64,000 nt of DNA from Laetmonice hystrix (GCA_965235115.1 OZ249436.1:62744001-62808000); one strand, 5' to 3'; counted from the stretch's first letter, positions 30,824 to 57,747 are shown. The notes: generated by a model not told the origin, from the letters alone. Program-made: numbers and translations.

Positions 30824-30929
30824 CTGCTGATTTGGGTGAAAACTTGTCCCTGTGAGCTGCACATACTGCCAACAACCGGTAGCCAAGGTCAAGGTCATAG
30901 CCTGGCCGTGCTGCCACCTGGCTCACCAC
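30824..30929 (-). CDS. zmiz1: ZMIZ1-family coding exon 3 ([35 protein letters not shown]+G)
   Basis: 106 nt, phase 0-1, acceptor TCCTATTCCAG|, donor CAG|GTAAAT. It matches the recalled human [35 protein letters not shown]. Confidence 0.97.
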
Positions 30930-39912: not shown

Positions 39913-40105
39913 CGTCCGACTCGTGGGTGGCCGAGACCTAACTGACTGGAAACTGAAGGAGACTGCCACACAGACACAAAACGTTCATTAGGTCCTCCAC
40001 TTTTTAGTCCGTAGAGATTTTCTGAGCCCACTGGCACTTCTACCTTCTAGTTTACCCGCTAATATCAAAACGGTTCTTGTAAATAAAACAGCACTAATAG
40101 TCACC

Positions 40106-40308
40106 GGCCACAGAACAGGGCTTGGGGGAGGACTGGCAACAGAACAGGGCTTGGGGGGAGGACCGACCATAGAACTGGGCTTGGGGGAGGACTAGCCACA
40201 GAATAGGGCTTGGGGGAGGACTGGCCACAGAACAGGGCTTGGGAGAGGACCGACCACAGAATAGGGCTTGGGGGAGGACCGACCACAGAACAGGGCTTGG
40301 GGAGGACT
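40106..40308. repeat. Minisatellite A, ~7 copies of a ~29-bp unit
   Basis: Unit approximately GGCCACAGAACAGGGCTTGGGGGAGGACT, head to tail with point variants. Confidence 0.95.
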
Positions 40309-40320
40309 GGACATTAACAT

Positions 40321-41106
40321 CGACTAGAGGAGGTCCGGGCACTGACCACGACTGGAAGAGGTCCGGGCACTGACCACGGCTGGAGGAGGTCCGGGCACTG
40401 ACCACGACTGGAGGAGGTCCGGGCACTGACCACGACTGGAGGAGGTCCGGTCACTGATCACGGCTGAAGGAAGGACCGGACACAGACCACGGCTAGAGGA
40501 GGTACGGAAACTGATCAAGGCTGGAGGAGGTCAGGACATTGACCATGGCTGGAGGAGGTCCGGGCACTGACCACGACTGGAGGAGGTCCGGGTAATGATC
40601 ACGGCTGGAGGAGGTCCAGGCACTGATCACGGATGGAGGAGGTCCGTGCACTGATCACGTCAGGGGGAGGACCGGACACAGACCACGGCTAGAGGAGGTC
40701 CGGGCACTGACCACGACTGGAAGAGGTCAGGACACTGACCATGGCTGGAGGAGATCCGGGCACTGACCACGGCTGGAGGAGGTCCGGGCACTGACCACGA
40801 CTGGAGGAGGTCCGGGCACTGATCACGGCTGAAGGAAGGACCGGACACAGACCACGGCAAGAGGAGGTCCGGACACTGATCACGGCTGGAGGTCAGGACA
40901 CTGACCATGGCTAGAGGAGGTCCGGGCACTGATCACGGCTGGAGGTCCGGACACAGACCACGGCTAGAGGAGGTCCGGACACTGATCACGGCTGGAGGTC
41001 AGGACACTGACCATGGCTGGAGGAGGTCCGGGGACTGATCAGGGCTGGAGGGAGGACCGGACACAGACCACGGCTGCGACGAGGACAGGACACAGACCAC
41101 GGCTGC
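40321..41106. repeat. Minisatellite B, roughly 28 copies of a ~28-bp unit with 25-29-bp variant units
   Basis: Unit approximately CGACTGGAGGAGGTCCGGGCACTGACCA. Variant units such as GAAGGAAGGACCGGACACAGACCACGGCT and GGAGGTCAGGACACTGACCATGGCT recur. Confidence 0.95.
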
Positions 41107-44100
41107 AGGCAGAACCAGACAAAGACTATGGCTGGAGCGAGGACCGGCTCGTAGCATTCCTCCAGACCCCCAGGACGTATGTACCCTGCCAGTTATCATT
41201 AGACCAGCTCCAACTGCGGCCACTGCCGACCTCGACACGCTTTCTTGATGCTTCAACCTCATGACTCCCAAATCAGCTACAGAACCTTCCTGCCTCGTCT
41301 AATACATCCAGAATGTTTCACACAACCGTCTACTCTGTCCATTTACTGTGGTACTAAATGTAGTTTGTATCGGCGGTAGACCTGACATGAAGATGAAGGC
41401 CATGGTTGACTTCTCAGTCCAGTTTCACATCTGATGGTCTAGATGAATCAGGGAATGAAAACCTTTTACGGTTTCTTCCTCAGTGTTCGTTGGTGTAAGG
41501 TAAAGGGTTTGCGGGCTGCACAGTCCTATAATAAACATCTCTCGATTTCCCCCCTCCATCTTTTTCTCCTCATTAATATCGAGTTTGGACTGGCTGAATC
41601 TCTGTATTACTGCTCTAGTCTATCATTGATGGGATCATTAGTGTCTGATGGAATGGTTTCCATGGTAAATCTATAAAGAAATACAACGCAGCATCACTGA
41701 AGAGTCAGAAGTCAATCAACAAAACAGCGTGAGAAGTCAAACTATCACGTATCAATCCGCCCGTTGTGTCACTAAACACTAGTCCCGGATTGGCCTCCCC
41801 CAGGTGGTTCGTATTAGGACCGGCGGCCTAATAGGGACCTGTGGATGATAGGGTGGTGGTGGGGTGGTAGGGGGTTCAGCCCCCTGACTCTCGGGCCCCC
41901 AGACACAACAACCCTGCCACCCAGGCGGCCAGCCGGGCCACGGCTCCCTCGGCCGACCACCACTTCTGCACCCTGCTCCTCTACGGAATGAAATACTGCT
42001 GCATCAACCTTCATTTGGTGGGGGTACTTCCAACTTGGCTGACTGTCTGGAAACGTGATACAACCCGGTCCTTGCTATAAACATTTCAAATAAATGTCAA
42101 CCGGAATGGATTTTATGTTTCCAGGCTTAAATTCGATACATTCCTGCGATTCCCTCCCTCTATTTTTATACCCGATAATTCTTAGTTTTATGTTAAGGCC
42201 TTGTTGGGAGATACTAGCCCCCACAGTAGATTCTGCTCTTATGGAGGAAGTACAAGTGTTATAACTCGTTTGAATTAGATGAAACCCACACAGGGGTTCT
42301 TGGTCACGAAGTGAAGGGCATCAGCGACGTGTTGTAATGTGCCAACGAGCCGACCAATAATATCAGGTACTGAGGCCTAAGAAGAAGTCATCAAAACACT
42401 CAAGCTCGTCCTAGGTGGTAATGTGGAGGAAGTCTGGCTATTTTGGCGGGGCCGGATCACATAGGTGGGATGCCTGTCAGTGTGCCTGCTGGTAGTGAAG
42501 CGGCACACCCTGACTCACAAGTGGCACCCTTCTGCCGTTTCAGGCACATTGGTGATGCTCAACAACTCAAGACGGGCGGTGTGCCAACCCCAACTCCCGT
42601 CATGGGGGTGGAGGGCGGGGGCGGGGGCGCGCAGGGGGACTCAGGCAAGCAAGGCCACCAACTTAGGACTTCTCCTCCACAGTGGGGTCACGCTCGGGGT
42701 CAGTAGGCAAACTCCCTTATCCTAAACAGGCTCCTCCCTCCCCGACACCAACCCGGGCCCCGAGTCCTGACTCCCAGTTGGAGCTCATCGAAACAGTTGG
42801 GGGAAACGGCAAAACGAACAAAAACACGCTGCCTGGCAAGTTGTCGTCACACCACAACATGTAAACAATGCAACATGCCCATTGCTCTAAGTGATTTAGA
42901 TTGAAAACAGCTTTTAATGAGAACACAGGACCACCGTAATCGGGAGTGTATCTTTGCCCGGTAAAAGATGAGCAGAGAGTACTCGGTGCTCCCGCGGGGC
43001 TGGGCTCACTTACCACCCGTGTTGTTTTTGTGTGCTTGACATAAAGCCACAAGAGAGCGGCTGGTTCGGGTACAGCGAGCGGTGGATATCATAATATACC
43101 AGCTTCTCTCCGCTCTTCTCTCCATGCCAAGCTTCCCTGCCACAGTCAGCGAGCATTCTCTCAAAACGCAAGTGGTGGGGGGCGTAAGTGAGCCAGGGTG
43201 GGGGGTGCTTCCTTCACCCCGCTCATCTTCCCCCACCCCCTTTTCACGCCCGTCCAGCGTGCCGCCCGGGTGGGTGACCCCTTCCTCCGCCGGGCTGACC
43301 TTGTCAGACACGTGGCCCCCAGAAACCTAAAACCTGCATCTCTTCCCCGAGCCCCGCTGGCTCCCGGGGCCGCCTCGCCACTCCTCGGCTGGTTTCCATC
43401 AGGCTCGGGTCCTCGCGCTGGCAGCTACCTCCTTCTTTGTTACTCTTTGGCTGAAAGATCATCTCAACTTGTTGCCAGATTTCAACATGGTGCAACCAAC
43501 CCTCCGGGGTACTAGCGTGGCACCAAGTTGGCAAGCTCGTCAAGTAAACTGCATCTACTAACCTGCCAACAAACACAATCTCCTGAACAGTTGCCATATA
43601 TCGTGTTCCCCCCGCCCCTTGCCACTGTCCCTCACTCTCAACGGTTCCAGACGCTCCTATTGTTATGGTACAACGGGTGCACGCATGTATCAACTGCCAA
43701 GACGAAGGCACGAAATCACTTCCTCTTTGTAGCCCCAGCAGCAAATCTATTAACCTAATCTTTCAGAAAATCATTTGCCATTTCTAAGTCTTTTAAATCA
43801 AGTAGCCAGCAAGTGCTTTGAACAGGGAACATGGCTCTTGCCTGATTTTCATATAAGATGGTAGCTAGGTTTGAATCATGACAGGCGCTACTGACCACAT
43901 CTATGAGCAAGAAAAAGAGGCGTTTTCATTTTCTTCAAACTTCAAAGTTTCACAAGTGTAAACAATACTTTGTGAAATCGAACTGGACTCTTGGAACGGA
44001 TTTGAGATATGGAGTCTGACTGCGACCCTCGCACACTGGGTAAAAAGACCGAGGGCGTGTCGCTCGCGGTACCTTCCAACACTCCAGTCTCCGATCAACA

Positions 44101-47397: not shown

Positions 47398-47511
47398 CGT
47401 CAGACATCCAATCAGTGCTCCTTCAAAGGGTTTCTGGAATGCGCGCGCATCGGAGCACCATTCCAAGAGTTCCCGCGCAGCGTTCTGGAAGCCGTTCGGC
47501 GTGCCCAGATG
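47398..47511 (-). CDS. zmiz1: ZMIZ1-family coding exon 2 ([38 protein letters not shown])
   Basis: 114 nt, phase 0-0, acceptor TACTTCTAG|, donor ACG|GTAAGT. It matches the recalled human [38 protein letters not shown] residue for residue in length. Confidence 0.97.
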
Positions 47512-53500: not shown

Positions 53501-55954
53501 GACATATCATTTCCATTATACACGGAAACACGAGCGTTCGGCCAGTCAGTGACATTCGCCAACTTTGCAAAAAAGCCCACGGCCCCAGACATGGTTCTTA
53601 GATTTCAGTACCGACTGATCTGCAGTCCTTGTGTTGACACACTTCACGCCATCCGGATCTGCCTGCCACCTCCCAGAATACACTCCGATACGTGTCGCTA
53701 CGTCAATCTACGTCACGAGGAGCGATGTGCGACGTAAGGAGTTGAATAGTCGGGTTATAGGGTTGAATGGTCGACCCTCAGCGGCTACACAGACTGGTTA
53801 GCCATTAGATGTACTTCATTACACTTACTTAATGCGAATGTATATAAGACATCCTTTATATCACAGTATTCTGTCTCTTGGAACCTCACGCGAAAAGGTA
53901 TAAGAGTCACAAACATCTATTTTCTTTCATTCTGCTACTGCGCTCGCGTTGCGCCAATTAACGTTGGCTCCTGACACTAGTTTTATTTCTGTCACCTTCC
54001 ACATAACAGAATCAAGCCAAGTGTTCGGCAGGAAATGTTACCTACACATTTGCACGCGATTGCGAGTTTATATGACAGCATAAATATAAATTTACACGGA
54101 TCCAAAATAGTATATTATCACTTTATCACTAGCAGGGTTTACCATGTAGTCCATATTTAGTGCATGCAGAACGTTAAGTTCCGAACAAGTTACTTCTAAT
54201 AGGTCTATAAGTATAAGCGGTTTTGGGGACCTCATGCACACTTGAACGTCTTGGACGCCAGGGTAGCAGCTATAACCTAATACTGGGTTATGTTTGTAAA
54301 TCCCCACCACCAACCCAGCTTTGGAGATTCTGTTTCCTAATGTTACATAGCAAACTGAGTTCCTGAGGGTCATTTACACAATGATTGCCCTTTTTAAATA
54401 CTTTAGCTAACACCTCGCGGCAATTACAGGCAACCCATTTACTGCTGGTAGATTCTAAATTTTGTTTGCGCAAGTCGATATGACAAAGATCAATATTTGA
54501 TCCTGACAGAACTCTTTTTATCTATGTCCGCCAATGCTATAACTGATCATAAGGATGGAACCCTCAGTCAATGTCTCCTTCTTTCAAAATATCCTGGTCA
54601 AAGTCCAAGGCGACACAGTTTCGCCTCGGATCCCATAAAATTTGAACTCCTGTTACTATTCTACAGCGTAGGACGTACTGCCATGTTCTAGCAATTCGTG
54701 CAATGATGTGTCATAAACTGATGGCCAAGAACTTTGGCCCCTGTGACAATCATGAGGGCTTCATGTACACCACTGACCCTGGCCCATTGACGTATTTGCC
54801 TACGCTATGTAACACTCAAATTGAACCTTGGTCCTTAATTTACATATACACGACGCCCTCTGACCTTTCTAGAGCTCCAGTGTACAACAATACTTCACTG
54901 CTGACTAACTCACTAGGCACAAAACCAAGATCAATATGTAGGTTTCAATACATTGTATTATGACAAGAAACTACAGAAACCCTATGTTTACTTTCTATAG
55001 CTGGCTATAGCTGAAATCACCTGGAGACGATTGACATATTTAGTGTCAAGCGTCAGTCTGAACGAGGGCAACAGTTACGGCGAGCTAGCTTCATTTTGTT
55101 CACCTAATCGACAGTTAGTGTCAGGACAAATATCAATGACTTGTCACTAGATCGTCTAGTGTGTGCATACACAGATACCAGATAACTATGCCCTCCCTAG
55201 AGAGGCACTTCGGGGCCCTAAGAGATAATTACAGTCTTTTCATTTTGACAACACGACAACCGGACTACAATTTTACTGATCTGATATAATTATGTAGTTT
55301 GTGCTTACTAAACAATTAAACTTTTCAATCTTTATTATTTCTGTAGGATTACCGGTACGTTTCATTTCGTATTATAAAATCATAATTTCACCTACATTTG
55401 AGGATAAGGCCCTTAAAATTTAGACCTCAATTATAAATGTATTTTCCAATTTATTTGGATTAGTACAATGTATACTGCTCATAAAAATTATGTTGTGTAC
55501 GCATTCTTTTATAGCTGGAAATTAATTGTAAGTCATGTCCCACGAGTTATAACTGACTCAAAATGTTATGCTAAGTTTAAAGAAAACATTATTATACCAA
55601 AACTGATATCTGTACAGTTAGATTTAACTTAGACTATATCTGATCTAACATGGTGCCTCTATCTAGCTTCATTTAAGGTAAGTCGGCCATTTCTATGTCT
55701 GTCTTAGTGAGAGCTGTACCCGCATACCCTAACCATCCATCTTTAGTAAGGACCGCTGTAACAAATTTAGCTGTTGGGCAACAGTAGCCTGATTTGAGTG
55801 AAACAGTCTGTATGATTGGTTGAGCTGCTTTATCATGCTTTCTTAAAATGTAGTATTCACTAGCTCGTCACTAGCCTACCTGTCGGATGAACTGTAGCCT
55901 GTCAATGGTTGGCTTGTAGGATGTAAGGCTGTTTGTGATTGGCTGGCAGCCTAC
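47512..55954 (-). other. zmiz1: zmiz1 intron (8,443 nt, GT-AG)
   Basis: Bounded by the exon 1 donor and the exon 2 acceptor, with an in-frame junction KQ|HL. Confidence 0.9.
55880..55954 (-). repeat. Diverged tandem copy of the exon 1 3' end plus donor; candidate in-frame 75-nt exon extension
   Basis: The copy ACCATTGACAGGCTACAGTTCATCCGACAG|GTAGGCT resembles the exon end ACGGTAGACCGACTGCAGTGCATCAAACAG|GTAGGCT. The 75 nt between the donors are 25 stop-free codons in frame. Confidence 0.7.
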
Positions 55955-56017
55955 CTGTTTGATGCACTGCAGTCGGTCTACCGTCTGCTGGATGTGTCTA
56001 TCCATATCGTTGTTCAT
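55955..56017 (-). CDS. zmiz1: ZMIZ1-family protein, first coding exon ([21 protein letters not shown])
   Basis: The translation is near-identical to the recalled human ZMIZ1 N-terminus ([20 protein letters not shown]). The ATG at 56017-56015 has a good Kozak context (GCAACC-ATG-A). The donor is CAG|GTAGGC, phase 0, and splices in frame to 47511. Confidence 0.95.
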
Positions 56018-56079
56018 GGTTGCGGTGATAACACTGGCTGGATAATCAGCTCAATGGAAAAGCCAACAACTCAGACCAT
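56018..56079 (-). other. zmiz1: 5'UTR portion of the first zmiz1 coding exon (whole exon 55955-56079)
   Basis: A strong acceptor with a CTAAC branch point (AACTAACTTTGACTTTTGTTTTCTCCTATTACAG|) lies at 56080-56113. This implies further non-coding exon(s) upstream. Confidence 0.75.
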
Positions 56080-56093
56080 CTGTAATAGGAGAA

Positions 56094-56163
56094 AACAAAA
56101 GTCAAAGTTAGTTCACCCTGGCTGCATGAACAAAAGTCAAAGTTAATTCACGCTGGCTGCACT
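56094..56163. repeat. 35-bp tandem duplication covering the branch point/polypyrimidine tract of the exon 1 acceptor
   Basis: aacaaaagtcaaagttagttcaccctggctgcatg followed by aacaaaagtcaaagttaattcacgctggctgcact. Confidence 0.9.
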
Positions 56164-57686: not shown

Positions 57687-57747
57687 GCCAGCCAGCCAAC
57701 CAGCCGGCCAGCCAGCTAGCCTGCTTGCCAGCCAGCCAGCCAGCCAG
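57687..57747. repeat. Interrupted (CCAG)n microsatellite
   Basis: gccagccagccaaccagccggccagccagctagcctgcttgccagccagccagccagccag. Confidence 0.85.

What the first reader, a model, noticed from the sequence alone, without database searches (positions are those of the whole stretch)
55880..55954. Duplicated exon end creates an in-frame second donor that would add a paralogous helix to the ZMIZ1 N-terminus
Seen: exactly 75 nt downstream of the exon 1 donor is a second CAG|GTAGGCT donor, preceded by a diverged copy of the exon end. The 75 nt read stop-free in frame as VGCQPITNSLTSYKPTIDRLQFIRQ. Comparing the last 10 codons (TVDRLQCIKQ vs TIDRLQFIRQ): T ACG>ACC, R CGA>AGG and L CTG>CTA are synonymous; V>I and K>R are conservative; only C>F is radical; D, Q, I and Q codons are unchanged. 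Both forms keep a DRLQxIxQ|HL junction with exon 2. Established knowledge: the ZMIZ1 N-terminal helical (TPR-like) domain is a protein-interaction module reported to bind Notch1. Inference: the synonymous bias suggests protein-level selection, i.e. an alternative 5' splice site giving a +25-aa isoform with a tandem helix that could tune cofactor binding. I know of no description of this, but could not search.
Basis: partly seen in the sequence, partly recalled or inferred. Interest (0 to 1): 0.7.

Follow-up and report, generated by a model that had tools for sequence, protein, structure and literature searches.

The report
Conserved duplicated splice donor in ZMIZ
In the single ZMIZ co-activator gene of a worm-like marine invertebrate, the end of the first coding exon and its splice signal were copied 75 bases downstream; the copy is unchanged in a related species, so it is probably a second splice site that adds 25 amino acids, but no RNA data could be reached to show that it is used.

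Summary
On the minus strand the first coding exon (56079-55955, ATG 56017) ends in ACAG|GTAGGCT. The same 11 letters recur exactly 75 nt downstream (exon-type end at 55880). They are preceded by a 74% identical copy of the exon end, in frame and without a stop.

The resemblance is not chance: 31/42 matches, against at most 27 in 300 shuffles of the intron.

The gene is not a vertebrate ZMIZ1. It is the only ZMIZ gene of a spiralian invertebrate, and the closest annotated orthologues found are from ribbon worms.

New evidence: genomic contigs of a related organism align only to 55783-56085.
- They show no difference across 55867-55972, which covers the whole extension and both donors.
- Exon 1 coding sequence has 2 synonymous changes.
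- The 5'UTR part has 4 substitutions and an indel.
- The intron from +14 of the second donor has 9/84 substitutions and indels.

Differences between the two copies are mostly synonymous (5.5/7 against 3.5/23 sites). The copy is therefore under selection, most likely as an alternative 5' splice site.

No RNA run was available, so use is not shown. RefSeq isoforms of two ribbon worms lack the insert, and one of them lacks the copy.

This scan has noted similar exon-end/donor duplications ("mirages") elsewhere in this genome.

The parts
55955..56079 (-). First coding exon of the ZMIZ gene. It is an internal exon with acceptor ...tcctattacag|ATGG. The 5'UTR part is 56079-56018, the ATG is at 56017, and the CDS is 21 codons: MNNDMDRHIQQTVDRLQCIKQ.
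   Evidence: The N-terminus matches ZMIZ orthologues. The aligned island in the related organism starts 6 nt before the acceptor.
55880..55954 (-). 75-nt candidate exon extension (VGCQPITNSLTSYKPTIDRLQFIRQ). It is in frame and stop-free only in the exon's frame. GC is 0.51, against 0.39 in the next 100 nt.
   Evidence: There are 0 differences in 75 nt against the related organism.
55948..55958 (-). Donor 1 core ACAG|GTAGGCT (exon end at 55955).
55873..55883 (-). Donor 2 core ACAG|GTAGGCT (exon-type end at 55880), identical to donor 1 from -4 to +7. An in-frame TAG follows at +7 to +9.
   Evidence: It is conserved through +13 in the related organism.
55948..55989 (-). Repeat copy 1: the last 35 nt of the exon plus 7 nt of intron.
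   Evidence: (family D1).
55873..55914 (-). Repeat copy 2, 74% identical to copy 1 and 75 nt downstream of it.
55783..55879 (-). Intron flank after donor 2. It is still alignable with the related organism, but from +14 it shows 9 substitutions in 84 nt and three indels. Beyond 55783 it is unalignable.
47398..47511 (-). Exon 2 (38 codons, HLGTPNGF...GCLT), the shared acceptor for both donors.
   Evidence: PF18028 scores 48.5 bits. PDB 5AIZ matches at E 5.8e-13.
30824..30929 (-). Exon 3 ([35 protein letters not shown] plus 1 nt).

Best explanation
This is an old partial duplication of an exon-intron boundary (the 'mirage' kind). It placed a second copy of the last roughly 35 nt of the first coding exon, plus its 5' splice site, 75 nt into intron 1 of the single ZMIZ gene of a spiralian invertebrate.

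The copy has been kept by selection. Most likely it works as an alternative, intron-proximal 5' splice site. Splicing from 55880 instead of 55955 to exon 2 (47511) keeps the frame and inserts 25 residues after Q21.

Q21 lies two residues from the end of helix 1 of the Zmiz1_N domain. The long form would therefore carry:
- helix 1;
- a 15-residue linker (VGCQPITNSLTSYKP);
- a second, slightly different version of the last 10 residues of helix 1 (TIDRLQFIRQ), joined in the native register to the helix 1-helix 2 turn.

Shown: the duplication, its frame, the identical donor cores, and the conservation in a second organism.

Inferred: that the second donor is used, and any effect on folding or partner binding.
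For: 1. The repeat is real and beyond chance.
2. The extension is open only in the exon's frame.
3. The two copies differ mainly at synonymous sites: Sd 5.5/7 against Nd 3.5/23, p about 0.002. Copy 2 keeps T12, R15, L16 and I19, four of the five columns in that stretch that are invariant across 16 ZMIZ N-termini.
4. The donor core is 11/11 identical, while the 31 nt upstream are 65% identical.
5. Genomic contigs of a second organism (runs X4-X6) align only to 55783-56085 and show no difference in 55867-55972. The flanks differ more: 2 synonymous changes in the exon 1 CDS, 4/62 plus a 4-nt indel in the 5'UTR part, and 9/84 plus indels from +14 of donor 2. For 0/88 against 9/84, Fisher p = 0.0013. 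At the flank's rate, P(0 differences in 75 nt) is about 2-3e-4.
6. [quoted passage not shown] An exact copy of a working donor downstream of it is therefore expected to compete.
7. Extension GC is exon-like: 0.51, against 0.39 just downstream.
8. A low-confidence single-sequence AlphaFold model of exon 1 plus extension gives helix 3-20, a linker, and helix 35-44.
Against: - There is no transcript evidence. No RNA run holds the stretch, and a protein search with the 46-aa exon-plus-extension peptide found no candidate. Both are blanks, not negatives.
- RefSeq isoforms of the two nearest annotated orthologues (Lineus longissimus X1-X6, Tubulanus polymorphus X1-X3) have no insert after CIKQ.
- Intron 1 of Tubulanus holds no copy (best match 22/42).
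- 177 of 179 ZMIZ N-termini seen here keep a fixed spacing across this junction.
- Copy 2 replaces the otherwise invariant Cys18 by Phe.
- Having no synonymous change at all in 25 codons is slightly better explained by a nucleotide-level constraint. At the per-codon rate of exon 1, P(0) is 0.09.
- Earlier notes of this scan report many exon-end/donor duplications in this genome. Where a transcript was seen, the first donor was used (not checked by me).
Confidence: 0.55

Rival explanations
1. A conserved non-coding element next to exon 1. The copy is never part of mRNA. It is kept as an intronic splicing regulator, for example an extra U1-binding site that helps define the short exon, or as a transcriptional enhancer in intron 1.
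For: - The extension shows complete nucleotide identity even at would-be synonymous sites: 0/75, against 2 synonymous changes in the 63-nt CDS.
- Conservation continues at a lower level for a further 84 nt.
- Annotated ribbon-worm isoforms lack the insert.
Against: - It does not explain why the copy is in frame and open only in the exon's frame.
- It does not explain why the differences from the exon are synonymous-biased.
- The fully conserved block stops 13 nt after the second GT, as at a real exon end.
- No structured RNA is indicated: fold z = -0.84 and no Rfam match.
Confidence: 0.23
2. A tolerated, unused 'mirage' duplicate. It is a by-product of a genome prone to small tandem duplications and is removed with the intron. 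Its conservation and protein-like look are luck.
For: - Exon-boundary duplications are a described and mostly harmless kind (PMC3087553).
- A 35-nt tandem duplication lies right next to this exon.
- This scan's notes list many donor duplications in the same genome (not checked here).
Against: - At the neighbouring intron's rate, no difference in 88 nt has a probability of about 2e-4, and this test was independent of how the case was picked.
- A neutral copy diverged to 65% would not be expected to keep 11/11 of the donor core (0.65^11 is about 0.009).
- It is not a minisatellite: there are two copies and only 42 of the 75 nt are alignable.
Confidence: 0.12
3. A constitutive long exon. In this lineage only the downstream donor is used, so the protein always carries the 25-residue insert, and the first GTAGGCT is simply codons V-G.
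For: - The intron-proximal site wins between identical strong donors in vitro (PMC3413131).
- The conserved block runs unbroken from the exon through the extension.
Against: - The spacing across this junction is fixed in 177 of 179 ZMIZ N-termini from arthropods to mammals, and the junction lies inside helix 1.
- The first donor keeps a full donor consensus identical to the second.
Confidence: 0.08

Closest known systems
'Mirages': tandem duplications spanning an exon-intron boundary (amphioxus Adh3 and globin genes; Ebner et al. 2010, PMC3087553). The human F7 intron-7 donor repeat was named only in this scan's earlier notes and was not checked by me.
   Same: The duplicated unit holds an exon end plus its GT donor and lies in the following intron. 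The period (75 nt) is in the reported range. Ebner et al. propose that such copies could become real exon sequence.
   Different: - There are only two copies, not an unstable minisatellite.
- The copies are old (74% identity over 42 nt, the rest unalignable).
- The copy is conserved without change in a second organism, is in frame, and shows synonymous-biased divergence.
- Described mirages are reported not to disturb normal splicing.
Alternative 5' splice site exons (frame-preserving exon extensions) and competition between neighbouring donors (Hodson et al. 2012, PMC3413131).
   Same: Two GT donors share one acceptor. The distance is a multiple of three, there is no stop, and the alternative region is highly conserved.
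   Different: - The second site did not arise by point mutation of intron sequence. It came from copying the exon end, so the added peptide partly repeats the preceding one.
- Use in RNA is not shown here.
Tandem exon duplication giving mutually exclusive exons. This is from general knowledge; this scan's notes also list such pairs in this genome.
   Same: A local duplication of coding sequence kept by selection, which lets one gene make two versions of a structural element.
   Different: - Only the last third of an exon plus the donor was copied, and there is no acceptor.
- The copy would therefore be added to the original, not exchanged for it.
ZMIZ1 N-terminal TPR-like domain (Pfam PF18028; PDB 5AIZ), reported as the NOTCH1-binding module of vertebrate ZMIZ1 (review PMC13687641).
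   Same: Exons 1-3 encode this domain. PF18028 scores over its cut-off, and the 94-aa N-terminus is 72/94 identical to vertebrate ZMIZ1 and 83/94 to the Lineus protein.
   Different: - The host is an invertebrate with a single ZMIZ gene.
- No N-terminal insertion isoform is described in the review. The known N-terminal variants are truncations that lack the domain.

Membership tests
ZMIZ (ZMIZ1-like) gene with Zmiz1_N domain | Match to Pfam PF18028 (Zmiz1_N) above the curated cut-off | tested here: met
   exon 2 scores 48.5 bits and exon 3 scores 45.5 bits, against a cut-off of 28.9. These are the only hits in the genome.
ZMIZ (ZMIZ1-like) gene with Zmiz1_N domain | Sequence similarity to the solved ZMIZ1 N-terminal domain | tested here: met
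   PDB 5AIZ chain A, E 5.8e-13 over all 38 residues of exon 2.
ZMIZ (ZMIZ1-like) gene with Zmiz1_N domain | Downstream ZMIZ-specific domains on the same strand of the same chromosome | tested here: met
   PF25527 (GBD-like_ZMIZ1_ZMIZ2) scores 117 and 66 bits at C1:62705879-62706406 on the minus strand. That is about 38 kb beyond the window and is the only locus in the genome. The SP-RING domain was not searched.
   the best matches are the ribbon worms Lineus longissimus (83/94) and Tubulanus polymorphus (82/94), then bivalves and gastropods. Vertebrates reach 72/94. No paralogue was found in the genome.
'Mirage' exon-boundary tandem duplication | The repeat unit spans an exon-intron boundary and includes the splice signal | tested here: met
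   35 nt of exon plus 7 nt of intron are repeated 75 nt downstream.
'Mirage' exon-boundary tandem duplication | A minisatellite-like array of similar units with length instability | tested here: not met
   there are two copies only, Tandem Repeats Finder does not report them, and identity is 74% over 42 of the 75 nt. The species' own read contigs show one form.
Alternative 5' splice site (exon extension) | A second consensus GT donor that shares the acceptor and preserves the frame without a stop | tested here: met
Alternative 5' splice site (exon extension) | Both junctions seen in RNA | not testable with these tools
   no run on record as RNA holds the stretch; all runs laid were genomic contigs; the protein search was a blank.
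Alternative 5' splice site (exon extension) | The alternative region and its donor are conserved in relatives | tested here: inconclusive
   It is fully conserved in one related organism. It is absent from Tubulanus intron 1 and from Lineus and Tubulanus isoform models. Lineus DNA was not obtainable.
Recursive splice site (ratchet point) | A polypyrimidine tract and AG directly before the GT donor | tested here: not met
   the 24 nt before the second CAG|GT hold only about 11 pyrimidines, so there is no pyrimidine tract.

The most novel reading that the evidence does not exclude
The long form is a regulated 'helix-swap' isoform. The paralogous half-helix (TIDRLQFIRQ, with Phe in place of the invariant Cys) takes the place of the end of helix 1 against helix 2 and displaces the original helix on a 15-residue tether. 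That would change which partners the ZMIZ N-terminal domain binds. More generally, boundary duplications ('mirages'), which are frequent in this genome, would be a source of new alternative coding segments that selection can keep.
Probability: 0.25. Interest if true: 0.65.

Novelty: new variant of a known kind. Interest (0 to 1): 0.45.

Why it matters
Duplicated exon-intron boundaries have been described as harmless curiosities, with only a hypothesis that they might become coding sequence. This case shows signs of having been kept by selection. The signs are synonymous-biased divergence from its parent, an untouched donor, and complete identity in a second organism. If RNA confirms its use, it would be a documented step from boundary duplication to a conserved alternative protein segment. 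It would sit inside a domain whose spacing is otherwise fixed from arthropods to mammals and which, in vertebrates, mediates partner choice of the ZMIZ1 co-activator. The practical value is modest. It gives a clear and cheap RT-PCR test, and a natural variant for probing what helix 1 of the Zmiz1_N domain does.

Tried and rejected
- **Chance resemblance:** rejected by shuffles.
- **Dispersed repeat or transposon:** rejected. The 301-nt stretch occurs once in the 627-Mb genome.
- **Comparison with a paralogue:** not possible. No second ZMIZ N-terminus exists in the genome.
- **Structured RNA or a known RNA family:** the fold z-score is -0.84 and Rfam gives no match at E<=1.
- **Recursive splice site:** there is no pyrimidine tract.
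- **Annotated isoforms with the insert:**
  - The search of 1.84 billion representatives with exon 2 and two region searches gave no ZMIZ with a copy-like insert.
  - Only 120 of about 238 hits were listed each time, so a long isoform could be hidden.
  - The 46-aa exon-plus-extension query found no candidate, which is uninformative.
- **DNA of relatives:**
  - The Lineus gene range is too long to fetch, and isoform X2 look-ups failed.
  - The exact 48-aa ORF is not on record.
  - A degenerate pattern for DRLQFIRQ plus GTAGG found nothing in JGI metagenomes.
- **RNA reads:** none were available.
- **Spliced long isoform:** Only exon 1 plus the extension was folded, with low confidence.
- **Other exons:** exons 2 and 3 of the gene have no duplicated donor.

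Full report
**1. The observation**

The gene runs on the minus strand. Its first coding exon is an internal exon with acceptor ...tcctattacag|ATGG at 56079 and ATG at 56017. It encodes MNNDMDRHIQQTVDRLQCIKQ and ends at 55955 in ACAG|GTAGGCT.

Exactly 75 nt further on, the same 11 letters recur (55873-55883), which gives a second exon-type end at 55880. These are the only two occurrences in the window, against 0.02 expected.

The 75 nt between them read VGCQPITNSLTSYKPTIDRLQFIRQ in the exon's frame. The other two frames each hold a stop. Exon 2 begins at 47511 with HL.

The repeat finder reports a 42-nt direct repeat of 74% identity with spacing 75. The 31/42 match was never reached in 300 dinucleotide shuffles of the 8.4-kb intron (maximum 27), nor in 3000 shuffles of its first 300 nt.

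Only the last 42 nt of the 75-nt unit are alignable. The first 33 nt of the extension resemble nothing in the exon. The stretch is single-copy in the genome, and contigs of the species' own reads reproduce it exactly (X2).

**2. What gene and what organism**

- Exons 2 and 3 match Pfam Zmiz1_N above its cut-off and are the only such hits in the 627-Mb genome.
- Exon 2 matches the solved human ZMIZ1 N-terminal domain, 5AIZ, at E 5.8e-13.
- The ZMIZ-specific GBD-like domain lies about 38 kb further along the same strand, again as the only locus.
- The 94-residue N-terminus is closest to the ribbon worms Lineus longissimus (83/94, with the same MNNDMDRHIQQT start) and Tubulanus polymorphus (82/94). 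Bivalves and gastropods come next. Vertebrate ZMIZ1 reaches 72/94.

So this is the single ZMIZ gene of a spiralian invertebrate, not a vertebrate ZMIZ1. The Notch1-binding role of the domain (review PMC13687641) applies only by analogy.

**3. Signs of selection inside the sequence**

Over the 10 aligned codons, a Nei-Gojobori count gives 5.5 synonymous differences on 7 sites and 3.5 replacements on 23 sites (Fisher p about 0.002). Nine random nucleotide changes leave 7 or more of 10 residues identical in 1.7% of trials.

Copy 2 keeps T12, R15, L16 and I19, which are invariant in an alignment of 16 ZMIZ N-termini, but it changes the invariant C18 to F. Its Ile at position 13 is the state seen in Lineus and Mytilus, so copy 1 has also changed since the duplication.

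The donor core is 11/11 identical, while the 31 nt upstream of it are 65% identical.

These tests rest on very few sites, and the case was picked for these very features, so on their own they are suggestive only.

**4. Independent test: a related organism**

No RNA run holds the stretch. Three runs of a second organism hold 36% of its words. Their contigs are genomic: they continue into unlike sequence on both sides, and not at splice junctions. They align only to 55783-56085, which is the exon from 6 nt before its acceptor plus 172 nt downstream.

| Segment | Coordinates | Differences from the window |
|---|---|---|
| 5'UTR part of the exon | 56018-56079 | 4 substitutions in 62 nt, plus a 4-nt indel |
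| Exon 1 coding sequence | 55955-56017 | 2 in 63 nt, both third-position synonymous (I9 ATC>ATT, R15 CGA>CGG) |
| Extension | 55880-55954 | 0 in 75 nt |
| Donor 2, +1 to +13 | 55867-55879 | 0 in 13 nt |
| Intron from +14 of donor 2 | 55783-55866 | 9 in 84 nt, plus three indels |
| Beyond 55783 | | unalignable |

- For 0/88 against 9/84, Fisher p = 0.0013.
- At the flank's rate, P(no change in 75 nt) is about 2-3e-4.
- A difference-free run of 106 nt among 15 substitutions in 303 nt has p about 0.02.
- At the per-codon rate of exon 1, 2.4 synonymous changes would be expected in the extension, so P(0) = 0.09.

The copy is therefore intact, in frame and with its donor, in a second organism. The fully conserved block ends just after the second GT, as at a true exon end.

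This relative does not meet that criterion.

**5. Evidence against use or great age**

- RefSeq isoforms of Lineus (X1-X6) and Tubulanus (X1-X3) show no insert after CIKQ.
- The Tubulanus locus (L011) has donor AAGCAG|GTAGGTAT and no copy in its 3-kb intron 1 (best 22/42).
- Lineus DNA could not be fetched.
- Among 179 ZMIZ N-termini seen here, 177 keep the same spacing across the junction.
- Earlier notes of this scan report many exon-end/donor duplications in this genome. They judged them to be 'mirage'-type minisatellites, with the first donor used where a transcript was seen. I did not check those loci. I did check the cited kind in the literature: tandem duplications of exon-intron boundaries in amphioxus genes that do not disturb normal splicing, with a proposal that a copy might become real exon sequence (PMC3087553).
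- A 35-nt tandem duplication lies 15 nt upstream of this very exon.

**6. How it most likely works**

Origin (inferred): a small local duplication copied the exon end and its donor into the intron.

Present state (shown): two donors identical from -4 to +7, 75 nt apart, sharing one acceptor, with an open frame between them.

[quoted passage not shown] An exact copy of a working donor placed downstream should therefore compete unless it is silenced.

Consequence (inferred from models):
- In an AlphaFold model of the Lineus domain built on 16 orthologues (pLDDT 89), helix 1 spans residues 2-23 and helix 2 spans 26-40. The junction after Q21 therefore lies inside the end of helix 1.
- The long form would read helix 1, a 15-residue linker, then TIDRLQFIRQ joined in the native register to HL and helix 2.
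- A single-sequence model of exon 1 plus extension gives helix 3-20, a linker and helix 35-44, at low confidence (pLDDT 63).
- The second half-helix could take the place of the end of helix 1 and leave the original helix tethered. This is a hypothesis only.

**7. Rival explanations**

- A conserved intronic regulator or enhancer fits the total nucleotide identity. It does not fit the frame, the synonymous bias, or the end of the block at donor 2.
- No RNA structure or known RNA family is indicated.
- A neutral, unused mirage copy is hard to square with the second organism.
- A constitutive long exon is unlikely, given the fixed spacing in other animals and the intact first donor.

**8. Verdict**

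Its use as an alternative donor is the best explanation (about 0.55) but is unproven for lack of RNA. It is a conserved, probably co-opted variant of a known kind of duplication, of moderate interest.

Noticed in passing
window 56094-56163: A 35-nt unit is repeated twice (89-93% identity), ending 15 nt upstream of the exon's acceptor. The upstream copy ends in ...cttttgttcatgcag, a possible extra acceptor in the 5'UTR. The species' own read contigs show extra short contigs and 2-3 times the depth here, which suggests copy-number or haplotype variation. The related organism's sequence cannot be aligned here.
   Followed up: partly
window 40103-41144: Minisatellite arrays of 28-29-nt units (up to 28 copies, 81-88% matches) lie in intron 2. 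They give long, spurious proline-rich ORFs on both strands.
   Followed up: no
P0289 (Lineus longissimus isoform X6) and P0294 (Tubulanus polymorphus isoform X3): Both ribbon worms have annotated ZMIZ isoforms that start at MLSLW and lack the whole Zmiz1_N domain. This parallels the N-terminally truncated ZMIZ1 forms described in mammals.
   Followed up: no
P0039 (Liparis tanakae TNN48122.1, 106 aa): A fish ZMIZ1 gene-model fragment carries a 20-residue insert (ATGFSEWDAGAGRGNKCHEG) at exactly the same exon 1/exon 2 junction. It may be a retained or mis-modelled intron piece or an alternative micro-exon.
   Followed up: no
P0005, P0012 (ENA genomic contigs up to 706 kb): ORFs called on genomic contigs read straight from ...CIKQ into HLSTP... 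and only leave the protein after ...CLTV. In that unidentified animal the intron between exons 1 and 2 therefore seems to be absent.
   Followed up: no
window 57687-57747: A GCCA microsatellite (15 copies) lies about 1.6 kb upstream of the exon.
   Followed up: no
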